Below are positions 3,415 through 56,564 of a stretch of DNA of 64,000 nucleotides, one piece after another. Both the position numbers and the translations under genes were made by a program. Positions within the stretch are counted from its first letter, which is position 1. The number at the start of each line of letters is the position of its first letter. Below the pieces are notes generated by a model. The model did not search any database, had not been told where the DNA came from, and saw only the letters and a list, made by a program, of their open reading frames with translations. Origin of the DNA: Octopus sinensis (Eukaryota); the NCBI RefSeq assembly GCF_006345805.1, contig NC_043000.1, positions 49,166,001 through 49,230,000 of the forward strand. The letters are read 5' to 3'.

Positions 3415-3508
3415 GTGTGTGTGTGTGTGTCAGTGTGTGTGTGTGTGTGTGTGTGTGTGTCTGTGTATGTGTGTGTCTGTGTGTCTGTGTGTCTGTGTCT
3501 GTGTGTGT
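3415..3508. repeat. (GT)n/(GTCT) compound microsatellite
   Basis: Direct reading. Confidence 0.95.
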
Positions 3509-3510
3509 TT

Positions 3511-3630
3511 TAGGCGCAGGCGTGGTTGTGTGGTAAGAAGTTTATTTCTCAACCACATTTTTCCAAGTTCAGTCCCGCTACGTAGCACCTAACGAGTGGA
3601 TTTGGTAGAGGGAAACTGAAAGAAGCCCGT
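3511..3630 (+). mobile_element. SINE family A 5' half, internally deleted and joined directly to mariner coding sequence
   Basis: taggcgcaggcgtggttgtgtggtaagaag...gttcagtccc...gagtggatttggtagagggaaactgaaagaagcccgt matches the head of 21885-22290 but lacks its central ~45 bp. Confidence 0.85.
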
Positions 3631-4143
3631 TCGAAAAGGATGTAAAGCATCTGAAACTGCTCGCAATATCAACAAAACGTTTGTTAAGGAAATGACCAGT
3701 GAGTGTTCAGCTCGAAATTGATTTAAACGATTTCGCAGTGGCGACCTGAGCCTTGAACATCGTGAGCATAGTAGACTGCCATCTGTCATCGATAACGGTC
3801 ATTTAAAGACCCACATTGAGAAAGATCTACGTAAAATCACTCGAAAACTAGCAAATGAACTTCAAGTTAGCCAGAAAATTGCCTGTAACTACTTGCATGC
3901 GATCGGAAAATAAAAAAATGGGTACCGCATGATTTGAATGAACATTAGAAAATGCGCAGATATGAAATTTGCTCGTCGCTTCTTCTTCGCAACCAGACCA
4001 ATCCATTTCTCGACCGTATTATAACTTGCGATGAAAAGTGGATTCTGTACAATAATAAAAAAAATGTTCTTCGCAGTGGCTGTACCAACATGAAGCACCG
4101 AAAACCTTCCCTAAATCTGAGCGCTTCAGAAAGAAGTTTATGG

Positions 4144-4293
4144 CAACTGGTCGGGGGATCACTCGGCTCGTCCGTCGATGAAGAGCGCGGCTATCCGCGT
4201 GAACTGATGCGAATTGCAGGACTCATTGAACATCGACACCTCGAACGCACATTGCGGTCCCGGGATCCCATCGTCCCGGGGCCCCGTCCGAGT
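4144..4293 (+). rRNA. 5.8S rRNA-derived sequence: near full-length retroposed pseudogene without ITS1/ITS2 flanks
   Basis: Contains the conserved 5.8S blocks GGATCACTCGGCTCG, GTCGATGAAGA, GAATTGCAGGAC, CATCGACAC.TCGAACGCAC and the GC-rich 3' hairpin. Stems: gtcgatg (4174-4180)/catcgac (4231-4237), cgcgg (4186-4190)/ccgcg (4195-4199), cccggga (4259-4265)/tcccggg (4274-4280). About 150 nt long. Confidence 0.93.
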
Positions 4294-4526
4294 AAGGCGG
4301 CGAGCTGGCAGAAACGTTAGCACCCCAGACGAAATGCTTAGCAGTATTTCGTCTGCGGCTACGTTCTGAGTTCAAATTCCGCCGAGGTCGACTTTGCCTT
4401 TCATCCTTTCGGAGTCGATTAAATAAGTACCAATTACGCACTGGGGTCGATGTAATCAACTTAATCCCATCGCCTGTCCTTGTTTGTTCCCTCTATGTTT
4501 AGCCCCTTGTGGGCAATAAAGAAATA
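4294..4526 (+). mobile_element. Full-length tRNA-derived SINE family B (tail type X)
   Basis: Starts aaggcggcgagctggcagaaacgttagc, has B box gagttcaaattcc and ends gtttagccccttgtgggcaataaagaaata. Colinear with 31751-31981, roughly 90% identical by eye. Confidence 0.93.
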
Positions 4527-5474
4527 AGAAAGGTTATGGTGACTGTTTAGTGATGAACTGCTGGGATCATCCACTATAACTTCTTAAGACCCGGCAAAAA
4601 CAGTACTGCAGTAACATATTGTCATGAAATTGCCAAAATGAACGAAAAACTAATACTCCTCCGTCCCATACTGCTCAACAAAAGAGGACTAATCAGTCAA
4701 TGTGACAATGTTCGACCACACGTTTCACTAATGGCGCTCCAGAAGTTGAGGGAACTTGGCCATGAAGTTCTTTCCCAGTCAGCTTATTTCCCAGCCCTTT
4801 CTTCTACCAACCACCAATCTTTCAAGCACCTTGATGGTTTCCTGCGAGCGTAGGAGTTCAAAAAATCAAACCTATGCTGAAAGTGCGTCGAAAGAGTTCA
4901 TCAACCCCAGAACTCCAGAATTATATGTTACAGGAATAAACAAACTTGTTACTCGTTGGCAAAAATGAGTTGATTTTAAGGGTACTTACTTTGACGAATA
5001 AAATTCCCGCATTATTGAAACATGTTGCTCACTTTTTACTCAGCCTGACAGCTCAGTAGAATAAATCGATGTTATTTTCTGATCATGGCTCAGTGAAACA
5101 GAAAGCTAAGCCCACAGGATATGAACTAAGAACGCACAACAACGTAACTAAGAGCCACAAATTGGTTTGTACATTAATCTATTTGTTTGCCATTCAGCTC
5201 AATATTTTCAACTAATTTGTAAATTTAAGAGAGCAATATATACTGTTCCAAAATATAATGGTATGTAAATCAATTAATAGTGCCGATTTTGCATATTATT
5301 TTACATTTAAAATACATTGTTATATGAATACCCAAAGCATTCATATTGTAATTCTATGCCAAATTACAAACCATATTTTACTGTAAATATATGTGTTTAG
5401 TATAGTATGTATGACATTTCTTTGTTGGAAATCGATCCCATGATATACAGTGTAGCCAGAGAACTTACATGTAT

Positions 5475-5532
5475 GTGCGCACACACACACATGCACACAT
5501 ACACACAAACACACAAAACATATACATACATA

Positions 5533-5568
<36 letters not shown>

Positions 5569-5603
5569 TGTATGTATGTATGTATGTATGTATGTATGTA
5601 TGT
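5475..5603. repeat. (CA)/(TA)/(TATG) compound microsatellite
   Basis: Direct reading. Confidence 0.92.
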
Positions 5604-5899
5604 GTATAAGGAAAATAAGACAATATAGAAAATGCTAAAATAATTTTGTCATGAAAAACATTTTACTAAAAACTGGTACTAGAACCGGTACTAAAATGTT
5701 CTTCATGATAAAATCATTTTCGCATTTTCTACCTTGTCTTATTTTCCTTACATAAAACAATTTCTCACCGAACAAACACACAGATGATTTGATTATAGTG
5801 ATCAAATATTTGTGTAGATATATGCTCACTACCTCAATCAGATCGACATTACCTGTACAAGTGCGGCGGATGCCAGTTGTAAGATGCTGAAACGACTGT

Positions 5900-12855: not shown

Positions 12856-12907
<52 letters not shown>

Positions 12908-13014
12908 CTATATATGTAAGTATGCATTATATATGTATATATATACATCCGTATGTATGTATGTATACATGTAAGTATGCATTATATATGCATGTGTAGA
13001 TATATACATACGTA

Positions 13015-13409
13015 TACTCTTTACTCTTTACTCTTTTACTTGTTTCAGTCATTTGACTGTGGCCATGCTGGAGCACCACCTTTAGTCGAGGATATCGACC
13101 CCAGGACTTATTCGATCGGTCTCTTTTGCCGAACCGCTAGTTACGGGAACGTAAACCCACCAGCATCGGTTGTCAAGCGATGTTGGGAGGACAAACACAG
13201 ACACACAAACACATACACACACATACATATATATATACATATATACGACGGGCTTCTTTCAGTTTCCGTCAACCAAATCCACTCACAAGTCATTGGTCGG
13301 CCCGAGGCTATAGTAGAAGACACTTGCCCAAGGTGCCACGTAGTGAGACTGAACCCTAAACCATGTGGTCGGTAAGCAAACTACTTACCACACAGCCACT
13401 CCTACGCCC
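13015..13409 (-). mobile_element. Full-length SINE family A (tRNA head, CORE-like segment, internal TA/CA microsatellite, 3' module)
   Basis: Reverse complement of 21885-22290: head ggcgtaggagtggctgtgtggtaag, B-box-like ggttcagtctc, segment gtggcaccttgggcaagtgtctt and tail gactgaaacaagtaaaagag. It may correspond to a published octopus SINE (OK/OR1/OR2), not verified. Confidence 0.92.
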
Positions 13410-13410
13410 A

Positions 13411-13411
<1 letters not shown>

Positions 13412-13464
<53 letters not shown>

Positions 13465-13517
13465 TGTGTATATATATCCGCATGCATGTATATATATGTA
13501 TATGTATGTATATATAT

Positions 13518-13549
<32 letters not shown>

Positions 13550-13931
13550 ATGTATATGTATATATGTGTATATATATATATATATATATAGATATATATA
13601 TATGTATATATATATGTATATATGTATGTATAAATTGTATATATATATATATATATATGTATGTATAAATTGTTATATATATATATATATGTATGTATAT
13701 ATATATATGTATATATGTATGTATAAATTGTATATATATTATATATATATATATATATGTATGTATTATATATATGTATATATGTATGTATAATTGTATA
13801 TATATATATATAATATATATATGTATGTATATATTATATGTATATATGTATGTATAAATTGTATATATATATATATTATATATATATATATGTATGTATA
13901 TATATATATGTATATATGTATGTATAAATTG

Positions 13932-13964
<33 letters not shown>

Positions 13965-14035
13965 TATATATGTATTATATATATATATATATATATTGTA
14001 TATATGTATGTATAAATGTATATATATATATATAT
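13412..14035. repeat. Compound (TA)n/(TATG)n microsatellite, about 620 bp, with an embedded GTATAAATTG motif
   Basis: Direct reading; explains the YI-repeat ORFs at 13356-14048. Confidence 0.97.
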
Positions 14036-14706
14036 CGGATAATGGCATCCGTTAACAGCACCGTGAATAAAATGCTAGAAGTACGAAGATTAAGCAACAG
14101 AACAGAATAATCGATTGTTTGACAGAGATGCAATAACATTATAAACGAAAAAGGTTAGATGAAGAAAAATAGGATATAAAAGTTGTATACGACCTTTAGT
14201 TTGATACGAAATACTTTTGCATTAGTCTTCTTGACAGAGTATGTGGAGTATGTGGAGTATGTGCAACAGTGAAGAAGGGACAAGCCCATATCTGTATGTG
14301 CCCCTAGAAAAGATGATAATTTAACAGATATTAAATATTTCTTATGGAAGCCGTTGTGATTCACGTTTGCAAAACATTTCATGAAATGTCGTCGTCATTT
14401 CATAAAAAAGGAAAACACATTTGGAAATTATAAAACGTGTGGGGTTCCTGTTCAACCGATGTTTTGAGCTAAGTGATTCGTCTGTTTATCTTCTCACAAT
14501 ATAAGAATACAATGATAGCGTTGGCGTGATATCTTTGTATACTTTCAAGAGATATATGATTTTTCTTTCTTCGAATTCTTACTGTTGTAATTTTTAACCT
14601 CAATTAAACTAACCATTATATTGATATTATATAAGATTATAATATAATCCACTTAGCATCGACAAGTCATAACTTAACTTAATCATAGTAAAAATGGTAA
14701 CTGTTA

Positions 14707-21094: not shown

Positions 21095-22626
21095 ATTAGT
21101 ATTCCTACTGGAATGAGTAAGTTAGTTTCAAACAAAGAAACAACAGCTCCACCACTGGTGTTTGGATAATGACAACGATATTTATTTACATATCAATCTT
21201 TAAGAAAGTCTTGCTTATTTTTATTTTTCAACTTGGTGGTTGTCTCTGTAAGGCTTGTGGTAACTGCTCTATTTATTTGCTTCAAAGTCCTAGCTTATCC
21301 AGATTGTGGCTCAGGTATCTACTAATGTAATTGAGTGCACCAATGATTACTGGCATAAATGCAAATTTATAGTGCAGGTATAGGCGTTGCAGATCTCGAA
21401 GCAGTTTCCCACATTCTGTTTTTAGTTGATTTTTAGAAGAGATGTTCATTTTTAGAAGAGATGGTATGTTATGTTTGCACTTAGGCCTTGTACTGATATA
21501 TATGTGTAATCCTTGGTAGAGTTGTTAATATTTTTTCCAGGGCAGTCTTTTCTGCAGATAGCATTGTATATTGTTTTAGCAACAAAATCATATCTCATTA
21601 GGAGGTAGTACTCCATGCCATTTATGGACAACTGTCAGTTGCATGTTTAACGTCCTCCTTGAAAGAGTGACATAATCGCTACATGAGGTTAACTCTTGTC
21701 CCTTTAAGTGCTTTACTGTCATGCCCGTTTGTTCATGAAATATTTTATAGTTATCTCCTGCTGTTGGATTTCAAAACTATAGCCTTCAAGATGTGATGTG
21801 ATGCAGTGGCCATGATTTCAAGAGATGTTACATTTCATGTTAATTTCTTTTCTTTTTGTAATTTATGGGAAATCTACCCATACATAGGTGTAGGAGTGGC
21901 TGTGTCGTAAGTAGCTTGCTTACGAGCCACATGGTTTCGGGTTCAGTCCCACTGCGTGGCACCTTGGGCAAGTGTCTTCTACTATAGCTTTGAGCTGACC
22001 GAAGCCTTGTGAGTGGATTTGGTCGACGGAAACTGAAAGCCCGTTGTGTATATGTATATTTTTTTTTGTATGTGTGTGTATATGTTTGTGTGCCTGTGTT
22101 TGTCCCCCCACCATCGCTTGACAACCGATGCTGGTGTGTTTAGGTCCCCGTAACTTAGCGGTTCGGCAAAAGAGACCGATAGAATAAGTACTAGGCATAC
22201 AAAGAGTAAGTCCTGAGGTCGATTTGCTCGACTAAAGGCGGTGCTCCAGCATGGCCACAGTCAAATGACTGAAACAAGTAAAAGAGAGTATATATAACAT
22301 TTATGAAATATGCAGAGTGTTTCTTTTCCAGGTCTTTCTTGATATATGCAAGCCCTGCTCTTCTGTCTGCATATGAAATGTCTTCGAGAAGTTAGTGTCT
22401 GTAAAGCAGTTCCCTACCGACCCGCATTCGTTTTGGAGCAGTTTGGTTGATGTATTTATTTTTGCTGCGATTGCTCAGCAAGTGCTGTCTGAGTGACTTG
22501 CGACACTAGAAAGTTGTTTGCACTGGGATGAAGCTAGTCTCTCCCTATTTTCTTCTGAGAGAGAATTGGTCGGTATTGCTGTTTCAGTGGAATTGAGCAG
22601 AAAGTTGTATTATTCATGCATGTATG
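21095..22626 (-). mobile_element. REL-endonuclease non-LTR retrotransposon (R4/Dong-like group), degenerate 3' portion, interrupted by a SINE A at 21885-22290
   Basis: Minus-strand blocks: ..VQTTF*CRKSLRQHLLSNRSKNKYIN..RVGRELL (post-RT); HITSHLEGYSFEIQQQEITIKYFMNKR; RLCHSFKEDVKHATDSC (CCHC knuckle); MRYDFVAKTIY (RHD-like); KCKHNIP; LLRDLQRLYLHYKFAFMPVIIGAL (REL domain). Confidence 0.8.
21885..22290 (+). mobile_element. Full-length SINE family A
   Basis: taggtgtaggagtggctgtgtcgtaag...gggttcagtcccactgcgtggcaccttgggcaagtgtc...gagaccgatagaataagtac...ggtcgatttgctcgactaaaggcggtgctccagcatggcc...gaaacaagtaaaagag; colinear with 13015-13409 and 39029-39441. Confidence 0.93.
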
Positions 22627-26231: not shown

Positions 26232-27516
26232 TTGGGTCAGTCCATAAATAATGCGGCTTTTTGAACTGCTTATATTTTTAAAAAATTAAGATATACAAAG
26301 TTATTTTTAATCTGAAGTATACGCTGCTTCACTTTCTACAATGTTCTTCCATCTATCTGGTAGACTTGCAAGGCCCCTCCTCCAAAATTCACATGTCCGT
26401 GATGAAAAATACTTCTCCAATACTGTTCTGACCTCTTCTACAGAATTCATATTTTTTCTGTCCAAATAATTTTGGAGAATGCGGAATAAATGATAATCAG
26501 ATGGAGCAATGTCCGGTGAATATGCTGGGTGGAGCATCGTTGCCCATTCAAACTTCTCCAGCCTTTAGAATGTCATCCCCACTGTATGTGGCCGAGCATT
26601 ATCCTGATGGAAGAACACCTTTCGTCTTGAAACCAAAGATGGCCCTTTTCCTTATAGTGCTAACTTAAGCCACTGGAATTCCTCGCAGTGGATCTCCTTT
26701 GTTGTCATTTGGTTTGGGTTTAAAAGTCCAAAGTGCACTAAACCTTTCATATCCCACCACACAGATTACAACACCATACGTGGGTGAAGACTTCCTTTAG
26801 ACTAGGGTACTGGTGTTTCTCCTTTCGTTACCCACTATCTTCGGCGCTTGACATTTTTATAGAGAATCTATTTCTTGTCACCATTCACTATTCGGTCCAA
26901 AATATGTTCATTTATGAGACGTGACAGCAAAGAAGAGCACACATTCACTCGCTGTGCGCAATTAGACTCGGAAATTTTGTGACGCGCCCAATGACCCAAT
27001 TTTCTGACTTTTCCGATGGCACGCAGGTGTCGATGAACGGAGGAATGACCAAATCCAAGCTTCTCTGCTAGTTCCTCAAAAGTTACGATGGGATTTTCTT
27101 CCACCGGGGTTGCAGGGCGTCCTCATCACGCTCTGCAGATCTTCCAGTGCGAGGTTCGTCTTCTATAACCTGCAGTTTCCGGCTCGGAATTTCTGGAACC
27201 ACCGTTGACATTGGCTTACACTTATTTTACGATCTCCATATACTGCATAATTATTCCTCCCACATCCGTTGTGTTGTTGCCTTTATTGAACTCACAAAGC
27301 AAAATATACCGAATATGCTCCTTTGTCATTTCCATTATGGCCTAGAAAAAATAGCTGTTAAAATCGAACTGCATGCTTCAAAACTTGCATTGAGAATAAG
27401 GTTAGGTAAAATTACTACTTGCTTTTATAGCAAGATGATGCAGATAGTCTATACCGCCCCCCTCCGACTTTTATTCCATGCAATTGAAATTCCGCATTAT
27501 TTACGGGATGACCTAA
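26232..27516 (-). mobile_element. Full-length mariner element (D,D34D) with both TIRs; transposase pseudogene at about 27335-26307
   Basis: TIRs ttgggtcagtccataaataatgcgg (26232-26256) and ccgcattatttacgggatgacctaa (27492-27516) match at 21/25; TA on the left flank. Protein MEMTKEHIRYILL..WFQKFRAG..VNGDKK*ILY..QDNARPH-(34)-YSPDIAPSDYHLF..GLASLPDRWKNIVESEAAYTSD*, with several stops and frameshifts. Confidence 0.95.
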
Positions 27517-31400: not shown

Positions 31401-31750
31401 AGGAAGTAGTCGTTTCAGATATTAAATTGAAACGATGTATGTGATTAAAGGTTTTGTACGAGGAACACGTTCAAAACAGATACCGCAGAAGTTACATTTG
31501 GGTGTCTTCTACGATGTCTTCAAGCTGACAATCAACTTTAATTAGAATTTAGTCGACAGTAACACGCATACTAAGATACTTACATGCGTACATACATTTA
31601 TACATACATAGACACACATGCACATATATATGTGCATATATGTGTGTGTTATTTTGTGTATTTGTGCGTGTTTGCGCTTGTGCGTATGTGTGTACATTGA
31701 GGATCACTTTTGTCGATATTCATTTGTGAATGAGGTATTAGTCTGTTAGA

Positions 31751-31981
31751 AGGCGGTGAGCTGGCAGAATCGTTAGCACGCTGGGCGAAATGCTTGGCGG
31801 TATTTCGTCTGCCGTTTCGTTCTGAGTTCAAATTCCGCCGAGGTCGACTTTGCCTTTCATCCTTTCGGGGTCAATTAAATAAGTACCAGTTACGCACTGG
31901 GGTCGATGTAATCGACTTAATCCGCGTGTCTGTCCCTGTTTGTCCCCTGTGTGTTTAGCCCCTTGTGGGTAGTAAAGAAAT
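31751..31981 (+). mobile_element. Young full-length SINE family B (tail type X) with a perfect 19-bp TSD
   Basis: TSD aggtattagtctgttagaa at 31733-31751 (the last base overlaps the SINE start) and 31982-32000. Confidence 0.96.
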
Positions 31982-32714
31982 AGGTATTAGTCTGTTAGAA
32001 AAATGAAAAACCCCTTATATTCTGCTTTTTTGTTTGTTTCTTTTTAATGAAGCCATCTGTGATACTTGTTCTACTCTGACTAGCACACTCCTTTGCCAAT
32101 CTTCTCATCAAAAATGAAGTAAATCTGTAAATTTCCAGTTGGTAATGACTAACTAACAATTACCGTCCAAAATGTCTCGCTGCCGGAAAACTGAGGGTGA
32201 ACACTCAGTATTGCTGCGAATAGTCGCCCGCGCGATTAAGCTTACATGTTTCACACTGTTTATTTGAAATAATGGTTGTGTATATAAATTCTGGTAAGGT
32301 GACGAAATCATTTTAAGTCGTTGGAGCTACGACCAGAATGCCTCGTAGTGCCTATTCCTAAAATTACATTCCACTGAGTTCAGTTATGCATTTCATCATT
32401 ACGGGACCAATAAAAAAATGTGGTACTACGAGATACTGAGTTGATGAAAATAAGAACATTGATACTTACTATTTCTCCTTGCTATTTGCGTTCTGAGGTC
32501 TAATCCGGCCATAACCTTCTCAAGAAACCTCTCAAGATCCTGGTTTTTGAAAAGCTAGATGGCGTTTGTTTTATATGCATTTTTTTTAAAGTAGCACACA
32601 TTGACATTTTGTTGATGTAACTCTGAACCCAGATGATGCTTCAGTGACATTAGCACAATAAATTCATTCCTATATTTATTTAGCTTTGTTTCCAAGTATC
32701 CAATAACGCACAAT

Positions 32715-37746: not shown

Positions 37747-37784
<38 letters not shown>

Positions 37785-37968
37785 AAAGATATATATATAT
37801 GCATATATATACACATATGTATGTATAGAGATAGATATAGAGAGAGAAAGAGGGACATTAAGATGTCTATATACATGAAAAACCATTAGATATAGAAATA
37901 TTTGTGTATGTGTATGTATATGTATATACATGTATATGTCAATATATATATGTATACGTGTGTATATA

Positions 37969-38008
<40 letters not shown>

Positions 38009-38034
38009 TGTATATATGAATGTATATCTAGATG

Positions 38035-38086
<52 letters not shown>

Positions 38087-38101
38087 CATACACACATACA
38101 T

Positions 38102-39028: not shown

Positions 39029-39441
39029 TACTCTTTTACTTTTTTACTTGTTTCAGTCATTTGACTGAGGCCATGGTGTAGTACCGCCTTTAGTCGAGCA
39101 AATCGACCCCAGGACTTATTCTTTGTAAGCCTAGTACTTATTCTATCGGTCTTTTCCCGAACCGCTAAATTACGGGGACGTAAACACACAAGCATCGGTT
39201 GTCAAGCGATGTTGGGAGGACAGATACAGAAGCACAAACATATATACACACACAGACATATATATATACATATATACGACGGGCTTCGTTCAGTTTCCAT
39301 CAACCAAATCCACTCACAAGGCTTTAGTCGGCCCGAGGCTATAGTAGAAGACACTTGCCCAAGGTGCCACGCAGTGGGACTGAACCCGGAACCATGTGGT
39401 CGGTAAACAAGTTACTTACCTCAAAGCCACTCCTACGCCTA
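39029..39441 (-). mobile_element. Full-length SINE family A
   Basis: Colinear with 13015-13409 from tactcttttac...gtttcagtcatttgact to aagccactcctacgccta. Confidence 0.93.
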
Positions 39442-42254
39442 CTTTACACAAATAAAAAATACCCTGTTCTTTATATGAAGTAATGTGAACAACAGTCCGT
39501 CACAAATACTTGTCCATAGCTATACTATTCAACCACACAGCCATGCGCATGTAATAACTGACAACCGTGATATATGGCGCTATATATTTCAAGGAATCTT
39601 GTGTAAATTAGGACAGATGAATTGAGTTCTATCCAAATTTGTAATATCGGTATGAAACTGTTCTTATTATCATCAAGGAAATTAGTTACCGAATTTGAAT
39701 GAAGCGGTAATGATGATTGAAACTAAGTGATTCAATTTCATTTTTATTAATTATGCAGAGAAAAACGTAGCTTTACCGCAGAATCAACAATTCACAATAA
39801 GATTTCAAAAATGCTTACCGAAGATATTCGCTCATTTTTACCTTGAAATTCTCTCTTTTAGTATGTTATTCTCTAACCGGTTTCAATCAGAGATCGTGGC
39901 CATGCTGAAGCACTGACATTAAGATGAAACATCCCCCGGATAAGGACCGAACACTCGACCTTTAGATTGCTTATTGTACTCTCGATTATTAGACGGATAG
40001 ACAGTTAGACAGACAGATATATACATACATGCATACATACATACATGCATACATACATACATAAATACATACATACATACACGATGGCATCTACGGTTTT
40101 CCTACTGCCGACTACCGCTCGCAATATATTGGCCAACCTGAAGTTATAATGCTCTAGGATACCAAGTAATTTTGGTACAAAAGAACTACACAAGTTTAAC
40201 TATATAAATCATTCATCCACGTAATATGTAAACATGAAGGAATTGTGATTCAAGACATTTGTTTCGCTAATTTTATATTATTTTTGTATAATTTACTCTT
40301 TGAAATTCAGAAAAAAAAATCTATTTTGGCAATATAGCTAAAGTACATTCTGTGTCTACTATTTGAACTTTTTAATACTCTAATCGCCATTTCATGAATA
40401 TTGAAATTGCAAGTGTTCATTCAAGAAAGGAATCAGCCAAGACTCTTGAGGAATAAACTTTGTTTTATATATTAAAATACAAGCCAGTTCATAAAGTTAC
40501 AAAATAGATATGTTATTTTCTTATAAGCATTCGACAAGGAACTACTATCCAATGCACATATCAAATTAATGACATGTTTTAGTTAGGTAGAGTACATTTC
40601 CATTCACACGGTATGTGAATGTGTGTATACATACGGAAGAATAACCAATTGATGGAACTGGAAAGATAAAGAATGGCATAGTTTGTATTTTCCAAAATTC
40701 TAGATTCATATGTGTATGATCTATCTATCATAGATTATATATAATGTAATATGTCTGCTAATATAGCAAAGTTACATGAGGGAGATATCATTCAAAGGCA
40801 AGTCCTAGCTGTATTACAAATACATTGTTCAGTAAAAGGCACATAGGCATTACTGCAACTAAGGAGGTACCTAAAATATCGCTCCAAGAAATGTGAGCCT
40901 TGAAATATACACTTACCCAACGTGGTAAAGAAAGTGATTGAGAGAGTGATTGGGAGAAATGGGTGAACATCTCAACACTTTCTGGCCTATATATCAGTCC
41001 CTGCTGTATTTTTAAATGGATATGTTTAAGTTTTAATCCTTATTGTACCCAATAAGGAGTAACCGTGATAGTTACTATGACAATTTACGATATCATCGAT
41101 AGACAAATCAAAACTATGTTGGAAAACCATCTTATAGATATACGTTTCAAATCTTAACACTGAATACAACCTCGGGCAAATAAGGTAACTTCTTATGGTT
41201 GGGCTCCTTTATCTTTAGTAAATATAATACAGAAATATAATTTAGCTTTTCTAGTAGTGGCAGTACTCTTTTCAAACTTGAAGACTTAGTTTCAACCCCT
41301 GAGGCTGTGGCAGTAGAAAATTACTCCACTGCATTCTTTCCCCAAATCACTACCAGAGATCTAACCAAATCCATCATTGCTAAGTCCACATACTCATACA
41401 GAGGGCACTACCTGCGTTTAATAGATACTCTCAATTCAACCAGACCAAGACCACTTCCATTAAAAAACAAACTCCCACTACTACAGTCATTGTTACTACT
41501 ACTATTACCACAAGTACAATAATTACTATTACTACAACTCCTACAGCCATCAAAGCCAGGCTTTCGCTTTTACGCTTTCTAAATTTTACCACAAAGTTTC
41601 ATTCTGAATGAAATACGTGAACTCCAAAGGAAGCAGCTGAAATCTATTATGATATGGTTATGTTTTATTGTGATATAAATATGGAAAATATTTCAATGCT
41701 ATTGACGAGATACTAAGTCTAAAATGCATGGATTGGAACAACAAGGTTTACTGGCATATAAACATAAATGCTGGCAACCAGACACAGCGCCCATGCATTA
41801 TATATATATATATTATATATATATATATATATGCTGTATACCTACATGTGTGAGGTATTTCTGAAATTAAGCTTACGCATAAGCAGTAGTTTCTTTTATC
41901 TCTAATGCGGTGGTGTCTATTTACATTTTGTTTGATATTTTCATCTCATCCGCAAATGTTAAAATAAAAAGCAAGCAACACGTGTACAATTGCATATATT
42001 ATTGTATAGTTTCACATATAAATGACATAAATGTTGCAACACATTTTGATAAATCTGGTAGAAATCCCAATACACTGATAAGAAAATCCTAAAGTTTATT
42101 AACCTTTTGAAGCACGCCAGTTGCTACATGGAAGGCAGATAACAACCAGAATTTACGCTACGTAATATATTACTGCAGGAAAACTTAACGATATTATTTT
42201 TATGAGCTTTATTCCGCTAGCTTGGCGTGACGCAGTTAGCAGTGATGTTATATG

Positions 42255-42530
42255 CATGGATATGTAAATGTGTATATGTATGCTTGTATACGTATATCAC
42301 TATATATGTATGTATACAAATGTTTATCTATACGTATATAAATATATATATATATGTGTGTGTGTGTACGTGTCTATATGAATGTATATGTATATATACG
42401 TATGCATACATATCTATGTATGTATAAGTATATATGTATGTATATGTATATATATATATGTATACGTATATATATGTATATATATATATATGTATACATA
42501 TATATATGTATATATATATATATATATACG

Positions 42531-42563
<33 letters not shown>

Positions 42564-42598
42564 GTATGCATATATATATGTATACATATATATAAATG

Positions 42599-42629
<31 letters not shown>

Positions 42630-42800
42630 ATACATGTATATATGTGTATATATATGTATACACACACATATAGATATATGTATATGCACGTATACTTATA
42701 TATTCATATATATATGCACATATGCATGTATAACTACATAAGCATTGGTGTTTGTGCGTGTGTGTGTATTAGTATGTGTTTGTGCATGTGTGCGTGTGGT
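42255..42800. repeat. Compound (TA)/(TATG)/(TG) microsatellite, about 550 bp
   Basis: Direct reading; explains the overlapping YI/MY ORFs at 42227-42854. Confidence 0.96.
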
Positions 42801-44011
42801 TGGAGACAGCAAATACGTTTTAAATGTCGAATGTTATATGCACGTAATATATGACGGCTTTAATTAGCATGTGTTGCGAAGAAATCTAGTTAAATTGGTT
42901 TCTTTCTTTAAACATGATGACCAAAGCATATCTTAGAGTAAGATCTTAAAGGTAACATCATGTACAACAACAAAACTAGCCATAAAAATAGTAATAAAAC
43001 CCTAACGGCATCCATTTCCTTAACATCAATATTAACAGCTGAAGAAACTACAAAAGTGATAGGATACATGTATGACAATGAGAAGAATTTGATGGTTATA
43101 TACAAATTGAATCGACTCTGTTATCATTTATGTTGCTAATATATATTTTATTGCTGCCGAAAGGATTAAAAGTAAGCTGATACCGAGTGAGCTTTGACCT
43201 CAGAACGTGAAGGAACGAAATGGAATATTGCACTTCATATAGACACCACTATTCTATAACGATGATACCGATCATAACAATAGACATTACTTAAAATTTA
43301 TAGATACTTGATCTATGATTATAAACAATTTTTTTTCAACAAATAACAGGATATGTTGTTTTTTATTGAATTCTTTTCTATGTTTCAAAAGCTTTCTCCT
43401 GGACCTTAAAATTGCTCTTTTATTTTCAAAAGCTGTGAAAAACTGTGAATATCGTAAAACGTTCTTTAAAAAAAAAACACTATGAATAGTGTTACATTAT
43501 CGCATATATTCTACCCCACAGTAAACTATATCCGAAAAAGAAAATAAAACCCCGGTTCAGTCCCTTTCTAGTTGCAGAATTGTTCTCTGTTTCACGAGTA
43601 ATATAATTCCAAACATTAATTCTGAAATACATTCTACGCAATTTTGATCACATAAGCTATGGAACATGACAAAATACACATCAAGTAAGTGTTAGTGTGT
43701 GCGCGCGCGCATGTATTCACCATTGCAGTGGACTATTTTAACTCAACAATCGTATGTACCAAATTAAAACGTGCACCGGGAAGCTATAAGACATTCATAA
43801 TGTTGCGTAAAGTATACCCGATATGCTTTTGAAACAGTTGTAGTACACGCCTACCTTTTACATTCTTTCTATTTACAGATTTGATTATCCTATTAGAAGC
43901 ATCATTTGTTGCTTTCAAAATGGAGTTGCATAGCACCTGCCATCTTACTGGAACTTTCTATCTAATCTCGATTTGAGACGAACTATATTTTATGCACGGA
44001 TTAATAAATTT

Positions 44012-44740
44012 GGATCTTTTCCTTTTGAACGGCACTTTGTAACATAATTTCTAGTTAACTAAACACTTTTAAACTTCGTATACTGGTAGAATGTGTTTAT
44101 AAAACATCATTTTCTCTTGGCTTTATTGAGAAAATTCTATAGGTTGTAAGATATTTCGTCTGAAATTTCGAGCATTTCGGCAATTTTAACCAATCGCTGC
44201 AGTCCATTTAGGTAAACAACATTCCGTGCTGTATGAATATGTCCCTCCTTTAAGAAACAGATTGGGTTTATTTACATTTGTGAAGAAAAAAAGATACTCT
44301 CCCCAACCCCTAACTAACCCTAACCTTAAATCTAAAATAGATTAAAATGCAAAAGATCGATACTAGGGTCGTAATTATGGGTGACATTTTCATTTGACAC
44401 CGCTAGAAAAAAAATCCCATTTTCCGTAGCGGTGTTGTATGAAATTGTCACACATAATTATGGCCCTAGGATCGATGTATTGCATTTCAATCTATTTTAG
44501 ATTTAGGGTGAGAGTTAGGGTTAGTTAGGGTTAGAGTTAGGGTTAGGGCTAGAGGTGGGGGAAGGGTATTGCCGAAATGCTCGAAATTTCAGACGAAATA
44601 TCTTACAGCCTATAGATTTTTCTCAATAAAGCCAAGAAAAAATCATGTTTTATAAACACATTCTACCAGTATACGAAGTTTAAAAGTGTTTAGTTAACTA
44701 GAAATTGTGTTGAAAAGTGCCGTTCAAAAGGAAAAGATCC
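44012..44740. mobile_element. 729-bp foldback MITE with long TIRs, GG termini, a probable 8-bp TSD and internal telomeric repeats
   Basis: 44012-44184 is the near-perfect reverse complement of 44568-44740 (ggatcttttccttttgaacggcac...). 44294-44405 pairs with 44427-44567 around a ~21-nt loop. Flanks are ataaattt (44004-44011) and ataaattg (44741-44748). GG ends with an 8-bp TSD fit MULE or Merlin, but the superfamily is not proven. Confidence 0.88.
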
Positions 44741-44903: not shown

Positions 44904-47234
44904 TTACTTTTAATCTGCATGTTTGTTGCAGCCACTTGCCGAGACGCCCCCAGCGTTCTGCAGCAAATAAAGGTTAAGAGATGTTACTGCATAACTGAGA
45001 GCTTGGAGTGGCTGGAAGGGGTTAGGACAGTAGCGAAATACCTCCATATAATACAACACTAACATTTAAATTGATAGGTTTTTTTCTAAGGATGTGGGCT
45101 GTAATTGTGAGCACAATCTTTTGGCTTTCTGTGAGACATGGTTCGCCTGGGATGTTTTCTAGATGTTTCTGACATCCCTTTTTTCTCTTATCTAGGGCAC
45201 GTACAATAACAAGAACGGTTTTTGCTTTAAGGTGCCACATCTTTTGTATTTCAATTTCCAGGTCCTTATATTTACTCAGTTTATCAAATTTCTTTACAGA
45301 TATATTTTTATCAGTGGCAACACTTATATCTATTAGTCTAGAAGTATTTTCTTCCTCGTATTCAATAATTATGTCTGGTCTATTAGCCTGGATCTTTCTG
45401 TCAGTGTTGACTGGAAAATCCCAGAGGATGGTGACATTTTAACCTTCAACTACAGGATAATGTTCATACCAGTTAGTAAGAGTACCAATTTTGCAGTGCT
45501 TACATATTTTCCTATGTAAATACTGTCCTACCCTATCGTGACGATTGTTGTATTCGTTTGGTGTCAGCACAGGATATTCCGAAACAAGATGGTCTATTGT
45601 TTTGTCAAATGTGCCACAGAATCTGCATTTAGGATCAATACCGTTTTGAAGAACGTTAGACTAGGAGTTCCTGGTAAGCAAGCTTTGATCGTGTTCCACC
45701 AGTATGAAGCATCCAGTCTCTACTTTCAATCGTTTACTTCTCAGCGACTGATGGGTTGTTACTTTATCTATATCATTTTGACTTCGAAGAATATATTTCC
45801 CATGCAGGGGCTTCTGGCTCCACCACTCCTCACTTTGTTTCTGCCTGTTCTTTTTTTAGTCTGCTTGATTCGTTTTGCTTGATAGCAGTAGTTTCAAGTT
45901 CTTCATCTTTTTCAGAGTTGATTGCAAGTTGCCTCACGAATTTATAAGCTTCTTTGGCAATCGAATGTAATTTTTTGCTGCTTTCATTTTTGCACACTGG
46001 TAGCAGCATCCAGTCCTCTGTGCTAGATAAGTACCTGTTCGTTTCTATAGCGATCATTCCTCTTTCTCCACTGCTTCTAGGCAGGTACAGATGGTCAACG
46101 TCTGCCTTTGGTTGGTATATGTACTTGAATGTCAATAATTTTCTTGTCATCCTGTCCCTGTGTTGGAGCTCCGTATAATTCCAATTAATAATGTTCAAAC
46201 TAATTTGAACTACTGGAAGTGCCAAGGTATTCAGAACTTCGATGCAATTTTTCGAGTTGAGTTCAGTACAAGTCTTTTTCTCTTTTAGTACTCGTTTCTT
46301 ATACTTTCCTTTATGGTAGCATGATGTACCTAAACTCTTTCGTTTATTCCCAGGTATTTATAATTTTTCGGTGGGTCAAGTTCCCTGATGGTAGCGTCGA
46401 TATCTAATTTAATGAAACCTGTTTTTCTGAGCTGCCTCTTAAAAGTTGCTTTAACACTCTTTTGACGCCAAAATCCATCCCGATGTCATTGCTAAACTCT
46501 TTAACAGCTATTAGCAGCCCTACTAGTTCTTTGTCATTCCTAGCCAACAACTTCTGGTTGTCCATGTAAAAAAGATAGTTTATTATATTCTTAAAATTTT
46601 GTACCCGTATCAGTTGTTAATCAATTCGTTTGAGAGTAGGATCAGTGACATGCAGAAGAAAGTAATGGAGAGAGGGGGTCACCTTGAAAGATGCCTAGTT
46701 TGATGTTGTTGCTGTTGGAGTGGCTCATCCCATTACTATTACTTAGAAAGACACCATGTGTTCCACTTGGCCATACTATTCTGTAAGAATTTGGAGATGA
46801 CAGGCGAGATCTTACATATCTCAAGTGCCTGAGTATCCATTTATGTGGGACATTATAAAACGCTTTCCTATAGTCTTTCCATGCCATATTCCGGTTCTTG
46901 TTCTTACTCGTAATTTTCTACAATTATTTTAAAAGTAATTGGTATTTGCGCCCATAAGAATTTCTTTTGCGACATTTTTGAGCTTGTAGAAGGACAAAGT
47001 TGTGTTCAAGGAAAGCGTATATTCTTTCAGTTAGTATGCATGTGATGATCTTGTACACGGTGTTGAAACATATTATTGGTAAGTATTTTCTTCAGTCAGT
47101 TAGGAAGATGCTTGCTCAGGGTTTTGAATGACATCAGCTAGAGTTGCAGCGAAATTTTCATGTACTTCTGTGAGACAATCCAGCCAGGAGTTACAGATCC
47201 GATCCAGTCTTGGGTTTTCCATTTATGAGACTTC
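44904..47234 (-). mobile_element. R4/Dong-like non-LTR retrotransposon, 5'-truncated, about 2.3 kb, degenerate RT + CCHC + REL endonuclease
   Basis: Minus-strand blocks in order: PIICFNTVYKIITCILTERIY; MAWKDYRKAFYNVPHKWI; GIFQGDPLSPLL; INYLFYMDNQKL; YKYLGIN; DHLYLPRSSGERGM; DPKCRFCGTFDKTIDHLVS; RHDRVGQYLHRKICKH; ILWDFPVNTDRKIQANRPDIII..LIDISV..KFDKLSKYKDLEIEIQKMW. Flanked by GTT/ATT repeats on both sides. Confidence 0.93.
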
Positions 47235-53060: not shown

Positions 53061-53689
53061 TAGCTTCCGGTACCACATGTCATCTAAAATTTTGTCAACT
53101 ACAGCTTTAAACCTTATGCTCTATAGCACCGTTGCCTGTTCCCCCAAACTTTGAACTGTTCCTGCAAAGGAGACATAAAATACCGTCACACTTAGCCTGC
53201 ACTTTACTACATCGTCAATCCATGAAAATAGATATCCCTATTCTAATCACTCGAGTAAAGACTGTTATACTCATTTAAAATACATCTGGATCGCATTCAG
53301 CCTCACAGTTTGGACAGGTAATCTTTAGGATGATTGAAATGAAAAGATAAAGGGAATTGCCTGTATATTAATTGTAATTAAACATTAATTACATCTTTTC
53401 ACAAACTTACCGTAGATAAAATCATCTAGGATTAGGTACACATGTTCTCACTATTCAAATATTCACTGTTAGGACACACTTCTGAAACTTTAAAAATATA
53501 TTGAATGAGTTAACTCTTGATATTCCGTTTTCTAGGTTGTCACTTTTGCAACTATTTGGACGCTTGTTTATATATGGCTGACTCTCCACCGTTCTTGTAC
53601 TTCAGCTTTCGATTGTATAACCAAACGTATTCCTACTCCTGAAATTAATGTGCAAATACTGAGTAGTCCACCGAATGACCCAGGTTCAT

Positions 53690-54121
53690 ATAACGTGAGC
53701 CTTCCTTGCGATCACAATATAACGGCGAAAGAATTTGACAAGATCTATAAATATAAAGACTTGCTAATAGAAATTGAAAAAATGTGGCATCTCAAGGCGA
53801 CTACAATACCAGTGATTGTAGGATCTCTAGGAATGATTTAAAAAAAGGTACTGAAACCTATTTGAAAAATGATACCAGGTTTACCATCCCTACAGGAAGT
53901 GCAAAAATCTCCTGTTAACTGGAACGACTCCTGTACTGAGAAGAGCATTATCGCTGTGAAAACAACATCCATTCATGAATTTATTTATTCATTAATTTTT
54001 TAAATACATATTTTATCTGTGAATTTGCGTGTGTAATCTGGGAATGCATACAATGAGTTCCTCTACCCTAGGTGTACGGAAAACACTCGACGAGAAATGG
54101 AAGAAAATATGAAGAAGGATA
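53690..54121 (+). mobile_element. R4/Dong-like LINE extreme 3' end (REL C-terminus + 3' UTR)
   Basis: VSLPCDHNITAKEFDKIYKYKDLLIEIEKMWHLKATTIPVIVGSLGMI, homologous to the C-terminus of the element at 44904-47234. It ends directly in (AAT)n. Confidence 0.88.
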
Positions 54122-54781: not shown

Positions 54782-56560
54782 ATGTTAGGTCTTTCGGGTG
54801 CTTAGATAAAATGCGGATGTCAAGTCGACCCAGTGTGTCTCCGTGTTGGTGTTTGGCATGTTAATAGAGTAAGGAGGACTATTTTTCGTCGTCACATTGT
54901 CTCAAATGTTCATTTAATCCTTCCGCAGCATTTCTAGCTGTTTCATCAATATATGTCATGTTCTTGTCTTTATAAGCACCCTCTATGCACCTCATGCTGC
55001 AGTCTACATTTATAGTTTTACAGCCAATGCCTGGGTTAATCTCACACACCATGCAGTTCTAATCGGTGCATATGGTATTCTCAAAGGGGTAAGTCCTACA
55101 TAACTGTGATCTGATTGCTCTCACTGGTTTTTCAACGATCTTAATGTTAAGTTTGGTCTCTTTCAGAGTTTTGCTAAATCTTCGGATTAGTTCTCCATAG
55201 ACTATGGCCTCTACATAACTCAGTCCTTGTTATTTGTCGGCCTTGTACCATGTGTTCATCCTGTTTGCTTTGTCATAAACTCTCCGTATCATATTTCAAT
55301 ATTTACCTCTTTATCTTGGGCAGGTACCACTGCTTTCATTACATATAATGCTAACTTCTTTCTAGCTCCCCTATTGCATGTGCAATCATTCTTTTCACCT
55401 CATTGTTGTGTCTTGGGTCTGTATGGTCCAACAATTCCAGCGCCCTGTGGTGCTTTTCTTCACTGCCGAGGTGATTGTGGGTGGTCTTCTCCTCTGTGAC
55501 CTGGTGGGGCAGAATCTACTAAACTCATGGTTGTCTCACAAATTAGTCAAAGCTTAGTTTAAGGAGAAGGCCCAGTACCCAAGTGTTGATTTCACGGAAC
55601 TCTACTTCACTCTCACAGATAATTTCAATGCATCTTCCCACAGCAAAATCTACGTCTATAGATGGGTAGAGTGAAACTACATTCATACTACTCACTACAC
55701 AACTTGCAAGATTGTTGGAGTGGTTGCAACTACTGATTCTACTGAGGATATCCTCCGTGCTCCCACAACATTCGAGGACAGTTCAATGAGTAGTCGTAAC
55801 ACCTATGAGAGGAAGTAGGACAACCTATAATTGGTTAGAGATATTCGCTCTGAAAACTGGCCCCATAACAGGGTTTACGTAAGTTCTATGGTCCTTACGT
55901 AGCCCGTATAGCGTACGAACATCGTTGTTGAATGCTTGGAAATTTTGTGCGCTCCGTTTCTTGGGTTGGAGTAGGTTGCACCACATTCCCATGTTTGCTC
56001 TGAGAAATTTTTCCACTGGTTCATGTTCCTGTGGTGCAACTCCACTCATGCTACTGATGTGTTGTTGCATGGTCTGGACATGTTTCTGTGGGCCGTCTAT
56101 CGACAGACTGCCAGACTCGTCCGTAGGGAAGCACACTAATTCCCTGTACCTACTTCGCTGTTTCAATTTTTGTAGGCCTTTGGAAGAAGATGAATTGAGT
56201 TGGTGGATCTCCCCTTCATTATATTTCTTAGCGGTTTTGTTATATCTAAGATGTGTCGGAGTCTATTTCTAGCTAAGGAAATCTTTACTTCTGTCTCATT
56301 GTCAGTCTGTGGTGGGATACATACCCATTCGTTGAAGAGTAAGACTATGGGGTTAGATCCTCGTCATGTCGTATGATTTGTTGTTGGAGTTATAGGAGAC
56401 AGAGTGTCAGGTGCTACAGGTGTTACTATTGTTGTAGTTGTTGTTACGGTTGCTGGTATTGTTGTTACTGGTGGAGGTAGTGCTGCTGCTAGTATTGTGT
56501 TCATTGTTGTTATTGTTGTGGTTGTTATTGTTATAGATGGTGATGGCGGCGGTGTGGACG
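54782..56560 (-). mobile_element. Penelope-like element, degenerate, with an internal deletion of the RT core
   Basis: Minus strand in order: Thr/Pro-rich N-terminus; GLQKLKQRSRYRELVCFPTDESG; LYGLRKDH..GP (PLE YGLPKIHK motif); SMNVVSLYPSID (RT motif A, about 55654-55689); NTWYK; then GIY-YIG-like C..C...P...CKT.NV..C...YI.ET.R..EGL.EH..S.L..HAKHQH..DIRILSKHP. No motif B or YxDD block is recognisable. Confidence 0.8.
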
Positions 56561-56564
56561 ATGC

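What the first reader, a model, noticed from the sequence alone, without database searches (positions are those of the whole stretch)
4131..4539. Chimeric 5.8S rRNA-SINE retrogene inserted as one unit into a mariner gene
Seen: a ~150-nt 5.8S rRNA copy with mature-like ends and no ITS sequence (4144-4293) is joined with no spacer to the first base of a full-length SINE B (4294-4526). The mariner reading frame stops at ...aagaagtttatgg (4131-4143) and resumes at aagaaaggttatgg (4526-4539; KVMVTV). So one imperfect ~13-14-bp duplication brackets both parts, and no TSD brackets the SINE alone. Established: small-RNA/retroposon chimeras such as mammalian U6-L1 and U6-Alu have this layout (full-length small RNA 5', retroposon 3', one TSD). 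They arise by RT template switching or RNA ligation before target-primed reverse transcription. SINEs with tRNA, 5S, 7SL, 28S and snRNA heads are known; I know of no 5.8S-headed SINE or 5.8S-SINE chimera in molluscs. Inference: an octopus LINE RT captured mature 5.8S rRNA after copying a SINE RNA. Because 5.8S has no promoter of its own and the SINE A/B boxes should initiate at the SINE start, the default prediction is a one-off chimera. A multi-copy result would instead mean a new 5.8S-headed SINE family.
Basis: partly seen in the sequence, partly recalled or inferred. Interest (0 to 1): 0.85.

Follow-up and report, generated by a model that had tools for sequence, protein, structure and literature searches.

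The report
5.8S rRNA–SINE chimeric retrocopy in octopus
A nearly full-length copy of 5.8S ribosomal RNA is fused head-to-tail to a complete octopus SINE, and the pair sits as one insertion inside a dead mariner transposon; this looks like a by-product of a reverse transcriptase jumping between RNA templates, a known process seen here with a new RNA partner.

Summary
Rfam finds a full-model 5.8S rRNA match (100.4 bits, E 4.5e-24), the only credible RNA-family hit in 64 kb. Real 5.8S homology runs from 4144/4145 to 4292. The 5' end matches the mature 5' end. The 3' end lacks about 5-8 nt, so it is not "mature-like". A full-length SINE (4294-4526) follows directly. It starts at the same base as six other copies in the window and ends like the copy at 31750-31982, which has a perfect 16-bp TSD. 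The host is a decayed Mos1-type mariner. The R-K-K-V/F-M codons lie on both sides of the insert, but intact transposases have them once. So one imperfect 10-16-bp target-site duplication brackets both parts, and neither part has its own. Best reading: a single retroposition event in which a LINE reverse transcriptase copied the SINE RNA to its 5' end, switched to 5.8S rRNA a few nucleotides inside its 3' end, and ran to its 5' end. Copy number could not be tested because no octopus genome was reachable. The weak evidence available (6 window copies, about 13 database SINE-derived ORFs) shows no second junction. This is a new member of a known kind, of moderate interest.

The parts
3638..4143 (+). 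Upstream part of a decayed Mos1-type mariner transposase gene (corresponds to aa ~36-208 of intact homologue P0002). It has several frameshifts and stops, and the N-terminal ~35 codons and 5' end are missing.
   Evidence: Pfam HTH_48 and Transposase_1; tblastn of P0002; frame translations
4128..4143 (+). 5' copy of the target-site duplication, AGAAAGAAGTTTATGG (ungapped core 4134-4143 AAGTTTATGG); encodes R-K-K-F-M
4144..4292 (+). Retro-copy of 5.8S rRNA. It has one extra C (4144), then Rfam model position 1 (4145) through about position 149 (...CCGAG). The last ~5-8 nt of mature 5.8S are absent and there is no ITS-like spacer. All model base pairs are canonical.
   Evidence: Rfam RF00002, 100.4 bits, E 4.5e-24; end mapping
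4293..4293 (+). Ambiguous junction base T. It could be the first base of the SINE (4 of 7 copies have T before AAGG), an untemplated addition, or a 5.8S-derived base.
4294..4526 (+). It is 6.9% diverged from a crude 7-copy consensus.
   Evidence: SINE-derived ORFs in Octopus bimaculoides proteins
4527..4539 (+). 3' copy of the target-site duplication, AGAAAGGTTATGG; encodes R-K-V-M
4527..4995 (+). Downstream part of the same mariner transposase fossil (aa ~203-358 of P0002); the WW codons are mutated to stops

Best explanation
This is a one-event chimeric retrocopy. Shown: a 383-bp insert (4144-4526) made of a near-complete 5.8S rRNA copy fused directly, in the same orientation, to a complete SINE. 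It sits in a dead mariner gene and is flanked by a single imperfect 10-16-bp target-site duplication. Inferred mechanism: an octopus LINE nicked the mariner copy. Its reverse transcriptase primed on the SINE RNA's 3' tail and copied the SINE to its very 5' end. It then jumped to a 5.8S rRNA molecule, landing about 5-8 nt inside that RNA's 3' end, and ran off at its mature 5' end. The cDNA was then joined to the upstream target end. Because 5.8S has no Pol III promoter and the SINE's own A and B boxes would start transcription at the SINE, the fused copy should be a dead-end, single-copy pseudogene with no function.
For: A full-model 5.8S match starts at model position 1 right after the TSD. 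The SINE starts at the same base as six other copies and ends like the TSD-flanked copy at 31750. There is no spacer, poly(A) or ITS-like sequence between the parts. The KKVM codons are duplicated on both flanks but single in intact transposases. No TSD flanks the SINE alone (best match 3 nt) or the 5.8S alone. Same-orientation chimeras are the expected product of template switching or RNA ligation, not twin priming (bioRxiv 10.1101/2025.02.02.635956). 3'-truncated small-RNA parts are known for U5 and U3 chimeras and are attributed to internal template switching, and L2- and RTE-clade LINEs also make such chimeras (PMC4476161). No second junction was found: there is one 5.8S hit in 64 kb against 7 or more SINE copies. 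In a phmmer search of the junction-spanning ORF against 1.84 billion proteins, 30 of 31 hits stop at or before the SINE's 5' end; the other, P0154, is an unrelated low-identity repetitive protein. The 13 SINE-derived sequences among the 14 fetched run into unrelated flanks.
Against: The mechanism is inferred from layout only. The TSD is imperfect (1 mismatch in 10 bp, or a 3-bp indel plus 1 mismatch in 16 bp) and weakly significant on its own. The partner LINE was not identified in the window. Small-RNA/SINE chimeras are very rare in mammals and were not reproduced experimentally (PMC4476161). Copy number across an octopus genome was not tested.
Confidence: 0.62

Rival explanations
1. RNA-level fusion before reverse transcription. 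A 3'-trimmed 5.8S rRNA was ligated (RtcB-type ligation, as proposed for U6/L1) or otherwise joined to the 5' end of a SINE transcript, and the fused RNA was then retroposed through the SINE tail.
For: It gives exactly the same DNA layout: same orientation, no spacer, one TSD. RNA ligation is listed next to template switching as a route to same-orientation chimeras (bioRxiv 10.1101/2025.02.02.635956).
Against: From general knowledge, not tested here: a primary Pol III SINE transcript carries a 5' triphosphate, which is not an RtcB substrate, yet the SINE here is full length. 5.8S 3' ends are made by exonucleases that leave 3'-OH rather than the cyclic phosphate that U6 carries.
Confidence: 0.12
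2. The source was a damaged rDNA unit. A SINE had inserted into a 5.8S gene near its 3' end, the Pol I co-transcript was processed at the normal 5.8S 5' end, and it was retroposed from the SINE tail. Alternatively, a DNA fragment of such a unit was captured.
For: This would explain both the exact 5.8S 5' end and the missing 3' nucleotides without invoking a template jump. TE insertions in rDNA are common (PMC10946416).
Against: It needs two rare events plus internal priming at a SINE tail embedded in a long pre-rRNA. There is no ITS, 18S or 28S sequence anywhere nearby. A single TSD derived from mariner sequence shows target-primed insertion, not DNA fragment capture.
Confidence: 0.07
3. The junction belongs to a multi-copy element: a SINE subfamily that carries a 5.8S-derived 5' extension and propagates as a unit.
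For: It cannot be excluded, because no octopus genome could be searched. SINE heads from 5S, 28S, snRNA and other RNAs are known (PMC4494074, PMC10946416).
Against: There is one 5.8S hit against 7 or more SINE copies in 64 kb. None of the other 31 database ORF hits continues from the SINE 5' end into the 5.8S-derived peptide. 5.8S is a Pol I product without an internal Pol III promoter (general knowledge). Four literature searches found no 5.8S-headed SINE.
Confidence: 0.06
4. Two independent insertions landed by chance at exactly adjoining positions (SINE first and 5.8S retropseudogene second, or the reverse).
For: Nested insertions are frequent in this window: the same mariner fossil also carries another SINE at its 5' end.
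Against: Neither part has its own TSD. 5.8S has no A-tail or LINE-type tail to prime its own retroposition. The boundaries coincide to the base with the 5.8S 5' end, the SINE 5' end and the TSD.
Confidence: 0.04
5. Assembly artefact that joins rDNA-derived reads to a SINE.
For: Both components are repeats, and no reads were available to check.
Against: The insert is bracketed by a duplication of unique mariner codons, and the mariner frame continues exactly across it. An artefact would not create a TSD.
Confidence: 0.02

Closest known systems
U6/L1, U6atac/Alu, U5/L1 and U3/L1 chimeric retrocopies of mammals (Buzdin 2002/2003; Garcia-Perez 2007; Doucet 2015, PMC4476161)
   Same: A small structured RNA lies 5' and a retroposon 3', in the same orientation with no spacer, and one TSD surrounds both. 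The small-RNA part begins at its native 5' end. Like U5 and U3 chimeras, the small RNA is 3'-truncated.
   Different: The captured RNA is 5.8S rRNA, which is not in the catalogue of L1 chimera partners (U1-U6, U3, 5S, 7SL, 7SK, Y, tRNA, 28S; bioRxiv 10.1101/2025.02.02.635956). The 3' part is a full-length SINE rather than a 5'-truncated LINE, which implies an end-of-template jump. The host is a cephalopod and the partner LINE is unknown.
Chimeric and tripartite retrogenes of Magnaporthe grisea (MINE/WEIRD; PMC2104539)
   Same: They show that LINE template jumping creates fused retrocopies outside mammals.
   Different: That case involves a fungal LINE and an uncharacterised RNA, and the MINE chimera became a multi-copy repeat. 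No sign of amplification was seen here.
rRNA- and snRNA-headed SINEs (SINE3/5S, SINE28/28S, SINEU/U1-U2; PMC4494074, PMC10946416)
   Same: An rRNA-derived segment sits at the 5' end of a LINE-dependent non-autonomous element.
   Different: Those are families with many copies and, except SINE28, a Pol III promoter in the head. Here there is a single observed copy, and the head is a Pol I product placed upstream of a complete SINE that keeps its own promoter boxes.
End-to-end template jumping of the R2 reverse transcriptase in vitro (Bibillo & Eickbush; cited from general knowledge)
   Same: The reverse transcriptase reaches the 5' end of one RNA and continues on the 3' region of another, which matches the full-length SINE at the junction.
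   Different: That is a biochemical property of an insect rDNA-specific element. No biochemistry exists for the octopus enzyme.

Membership tests
Chimeric retrocopy made in one target-primed reverse transcription event (U6/L1 type) | Two unrelated RNA-derived parts fused directly, in the same orientation | tested here: met
   5.8S runs to 4292 and the SINE starts at 4293/4294, both on the + strand, with no spacer
Chimeric retrocopy made in one target-primed reverse transcription event (U6/L1 type) | A single TSD brackets the whole unit and none brackets either part | tested here: met
   AGAAAGAAGTTTATGG / AGAAAGGTTATGG. The KKVM codons lie on both flanks but occur once in intact homologues. 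The best match for the SINE alone is 3 nt; for the 5.8S alone the match is off-boundary.
Chimeric retrocopy made in one target-primed reverse transcription event (U6/L1 type) | The 3' part ends with the complete retroposon tail used for priming | tested here: met
   The tail ...AATAAAGAAATA ends at the same position as in the TSD-flanked copy at 31750-31982
Chimeric retrocopy made in one target-primed reverse transcription event (U6/L1 type) | The 5' part begins at the native 5' end of the captured RNA (RT run-off) | tested here: met
   Rfam model position 1 is at 4145, one base after the TSD. The extra C at 4144 corresponds to position 1 of human 5.8S as recalled from memory.
Chimeric retrocopy made in one target-primed reverse transcription event (U6/L1 type) | No flanking gene sequence (ITS1/ITS2) of the captured RNA | tested here: inconclusive
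   There is no room for ITS on either side, and the 3' end is truncated. The species' own rDNA could not be obtained for a direct comparison.
Chimeric retrocopy made in one target-primed reverse transcription event (U6/L1 type) | Empty orthologous or paralogous site, and a target motif of the partner LINE's endonuclease | not testable with these tools
   No octopus genome was reachable. The closest mariner proteins are only ~50% identical. The partner LINE was not identified.
SINE family with a 5.8S-derived head | Many copies share the same head-body junction, each with its own TSD | tested here: inconclusive
   There is one junction in 64 kb against 7 or more SINE copies. None of 31 ORF hits in 1.84 billion proteins crosses the junction. 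No genome-wide search was possible.
SINE family with a 5.8S-derived head | The head supplies the promoter for transcription of the whole unit | not tested
   From general knowledge, 5.8S is cut from a Pol I precursor and has no internal Pol III promoter. The A- and B-box-like motifs lie in the SINE part (4306-4316, 4368-4380).
Functional 5.8S rRNA gene (Rfam RF00002) | Full-length match above the gathering score | tested here: met
   100.4 bits against 42, model 1-154. However, the last ~5 model positions are matched by SINE bases.
Functional 5.8S rRNA gene (Rfam RF00002) | Lies in an rDNA unit between 18S/ITS1 and ITS2/28S | tested here: not met
   It is flanked by mariner codons and a SINE, and there is no SSU or LSU hit in 64 kb
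Mos1/mariner transposon | Transposase with an HTH_48 domain and a DDE (Transposase_1) domain | tested here: met
   Pfam E-values 1.2e-06 and 1e-15, with ~50% identity to SETMAR-like or mariner transposases. The gene is decayed by stops and frameshifts, and no terminal inverted repeats were identified.

The most novel reading that the evidence does not exclude
The 5.8S-SINE junction is not unique. Either the fused unit was re-transcribed (for example by read-through) and founded a 5.8S-headed SINE subfamily, or octopus LINE particles recurrently switch to 5.8S rRNA, so the genome holds many independent 5.8S-SINE or 5.8S-LINE chimeras. Either case would be the first 5.8S-derived mobile module and a marker of LINE reverse transcription in contact with ribosomal or nucleolar RNA.
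Probability: 0.06. Interest if true: 0.7.

Novelty: new member of a known kind. Interest (0 to 1): 0.35.

Why it matters
It adds 5.8S rRNA to the list of cellular RNAs caught by LINE reverse transcriptases. It extends template-switch-type chimeras to a cephalopod, a lineage whose genomes are full of SINEs and LINEs. It is also a rare example of a small-RNA/SINE chimera, as opposed to small-RNA/LINE; in mammals that combination is almost absent. The full-length SINE at the junction points to an end-of-template jump, the step thought to create new SINE families by joining RNA heads to LINE-recognised tails. As a single decayed copy it has no likely function. Its value is as a mechanistic footprint and as a prompt for a genome-wide screen.

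Tried and rejected
1. Exact look-ups of four ORFs spanning the chimera in the contig index found nothing on record.
2. A word-indexed protein search with the 78-aa junction ORF found no candidates.
3. Metagenome scans found nothing, either for a 5.8S...SINE gapped pattern or for a 27-nt SINE core. The same SINE core also gave 0 hits in prokaryotic genome contigs and viral contigs. So no octopus DNA is in those collections.
4. I used the mariner and a LINE ORF from 45833-46357 to try to reach octopus loci. The best mariner hits are ~50% identical and not from octopus. The two ENA loci fetched (L001, L002) share only the LINE at ~64-68% and contain no copy of the SINE, 5.8S or mariner.
5. No partner LINE was found: the SINE tail matches only the other full-length SINE copy in the window.
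6. A tRNA origin of the SINE head was not confirmed. ARAGORN found no tRNA, and Rfam at E<=1 gave no tRNA hit. Only A- and B-box-like motifs are seen.
7. My impression that the SINE body resembles the MIR/CORE domain (octopus OR1 is a CORE-SINE, PMC4824008) was not supported.
8. CpG observed/expected ratios (5.8S 1.32, SINE 1.16, mariner 1.25 and 0.64) are uninformative about age.
9. Possible microhomology between the 5.8S 3' end and the SINE start (GGCGGCG here against GGCGGTG in most copies) could not be evaluated without the native 5.8S sequence.

Full report
**What is in the sequence**

Rfam places one 5.8S rRNA match at 4145-4302 on the + strand. It covers the whole model (1-154), scores 100.4 bits against a gathering score of 42, has E 4.5e-24, and no model base pair is flagged as non-canonical. 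It is the only hit above gathering in the 64 kb. At E<=1 the remaining hits are almost all microsatellite-driven miRNA matches, plus a few weak sub-threshold matches to other families. There is no 18S or 28S match, so this is not an rDNA unit.

**Where the 5.8S part really ends**

BLAST of 4294-4526 against the window finds one more full-length copy (31750-31982, 88.8%). It also finds at least five further copies that share the first ~170 bp but carry another tail. All of them begin AAGGCGG... at the base equivalent to 4294, and their upstream flanks are unrelated. So the last nine bases of the Rfam match (4294-4302) belong to the SINE; the global model alignment absorbed them.

True 5.8S homology stops at ...CCGAG (4292). 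This corresponds to about model position 149 of 154, and to position 149 of 157 of human 5.8S.

The 5' end is exact: model position 1 is 4145, preceded by one C (4144) directly after the duplicated target. T4293 cannot be assigned. Four of seven SINE copies have a T before AAGG.

**The SINE**

The copy is complete. It ends ...AATAAAGAAATA at the same point as the copy at 31750-31982, which is flanked by a perfect 16-bp TSD, GGTATTAGTCTGTTAG (0 of 2000 shuffles reach that score). It is 6.9% diverged from a crude seven-copy consensus. It carries an A-box-like motif at 4306-4316 and a B-box-like motif at 4368-4380.

The SINE is a genuine octopus repeat. A phmmer search with a translation of it recovers SINE-derived ORFs, including XP_052828027.1 and A0A0L8GQ56 of Octopus bimaculoides.

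A tRNA origin was not confirmed. A suspected CORE/MIR relationship was not supported either.

**The host and the target-site duplication**

The flanks are a decayed Mos1-type mariner:
- Pfam gives Transposase_1 at 1e-15 and HTH_48 at 1.2e-06.
- The copy is ~50% identical to intact SETMAR-like or mariner transposases.
- It has several stops and frameshifts.

In tblastn, aa 182-208 of homologue P0002 end at the insert and aa 203-324 resume right after it. In a protein alignment, the upstream end ...FRKKFM and the downstream start RKVMVTV... fall on the same single QKKVM columns of three intact transposases. The target codons are therefore duplicated.

The 5' copy is AGAAAGAAGTTTATGG (4128-4143) and the 3' copy is AGAAAGGTTATGG (4527-4539). 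They share a flush ungapped core of 10 bp with one mismatch, or 16 against 13 bp with a 3-bp indel. As a bare string match this is only modestly unusual (96 of 2000 shuffles). The homology argument is what makes it convincing.

Neither part has its own TSD. For the SINE alone the best flank match is 3 nt, and for the 5.8S alone only an off-boundary hexamer is found.

**Mechanism**

Shown: there is one insertion unit, 5.8S then SINE in the same orientation, with no spacer, A-tract or ITS. It is bounded by the native 5.8S 5' end, the SINE tail and one TSD.

Inferred: the insertion arose by target-primed reverse transcription started on the SINE tail. The enzyme copied the SINE to its 5' end, jumped onto 5.8S rRNA a few nucleotides inside its 3' end, and ran off at its 5' end.

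The literature supports this reading in three ways:
- Same-orientation chimeras are attributed to template switching or RNA ligation, and inverted ones to twin priming (bioRxiv 10.1101/2025.02.02.635956).
- U5 and U3 chimeras are 3'-truncated and are explained by internal template switching (PMC4476161).
- L2 and RTE LINEs also make such chimeras, while snRNA/Alu chimeras are very rare (PMC4476161).

Rivals are RNA ligation before reverse transcription, a SINE-disrupted rDNA unit as the source, two independent insertions, an assembly artefact, and membership of a multi-copy family. They are weighed in the Rival explanations section.

**Copy number**

No octopus genome is reachable with the tools:
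- Exact ORF look-ups failed.
- The word-indexed protein search found nothing.
- Pattern scans of metagenome, prokaryote and viral contigs found no copy even of the SINE core.
- Loci reached through a LINE ORF are not from octopus.

The only indirect evidence points to a one-off:
- There is one junction among at least seven SINE copies in the window.
- In the phmmer search of the 89-aa junction-spanning ORF against 1.84 billion representative proteins, the hits are confined to the SINE-derived residues (<=68). The one exception, P0154, is an unrelated repetitive protein.
- The 13 SINE-derived sequences among the 14 hit sequences inspected continue past the SINE 5' end into unrelated sequence, never into the 5.8S-derived peptide.

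This bounds the chimera to a minority of copies. It does not exclude a rare subfamily.

**Comparison with what is known, and novelty**

The layout is that of U6/L1-type chimeric retrocopies. The catalogue of L1 chimera partners comprises U1-U6, U3, 5S, 7SL, 7SK, Y RNA, tRNA and 28S. Reviews of rDNA-derived mobile elements list 5S and 28S heads. Four literature searches found no 5.8S chimera or 5.8S-headed SINE.

The finding is therefore a new member of a known kind, with a new captured RNA, a SINE rather than a LINE as the 3' partner, and a cephalopod host. As a single, roughly 7%-diverged copy inside a dead transposon, it has no plausible function. Interest is moderate (0.35). It would rise sharply only if a genome-wide search showed many copies.

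Noticed in passing
window 3514-3630 (+); other copies 13248-13407 (-), 39279-39438 (-), 21892-22039 (+): A second, different SINE (ending ...GGATTTGGTAGAGGGAAACTGAAAGAAGCCCGT) abuts the 5' end of the same mariner fossil, where the first ~35 transposase codons and the 5' terminus are missing. This copy lacks an internal segment that the other copies have. A (TG)n microsatellite lies just upstream (3420-3510).
   Followed up: partly
window ~56590-57700 (+): A second mariner-type transposase fossil of a different subfamily, with no DNA similarity to the first. It includes a 195-aa ORF at 56404-56991 and the motif ...KNLTVCVWWSGAGV....
   Followed up: partly
window 26310-27122 (-): A third mariner/Tc1-like transposase remnant (ORF fragments ...HLRAIGKVRKLGHWARHK... 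and ...AYSPDIAPSDYHLF...).
   Followed up: no
window 45025-46917 (-); also 53536-53838 (+): A LINE remnant with a reverse-transcriptase motif (FQGDPLSPLL) and a conserved C-terminal region. It is ~64-68% identical at the DNA level to LINEs on two ENA long-read metagenome contigs (ERZ25878469, ERZ25067561) from an unidentified non-octopus eukaryote.
   Followed up: partly
window 44300-44550: A ~240-bp near-palindrome (99-nt arms, 83% complementary, 7 nt apart). Its outer ends are degenerate telomere-like repeats, (CCCTAA)n on the left and (TTAGGG)n on the right. It may be a foldback or MITE-like element.
   Followed up: partly
window 5480-5620, 12900-14050, 37750-38100, 42250-42850: Long TA/TG-rich microsatellite tracts produce dozens of sub-threshold Rfam miRNA matches (mir-297, mir-466, mir-3149 and others). 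They also produce long spurious ORFs rich in I, Y and H.
   Followed up: yes
window 3952-4320 (+): A 122-aa ATG-initiated ORF runs from mariner codons through the whole 5.8S copy into the SINE. It is a chance ORF and is not on record in the protein or contig collections.
   Followed up: yes
window 4301: This SINE copy has C at its 8th base (GGCGGCG), where four of the six other copies have T (GGCGGTG). It could be a CpG retained from the master copy or a trace of the 5.8S 3' end at the switch point. This cannot be decided without the native 5.8S sequence.
   Followed up: no
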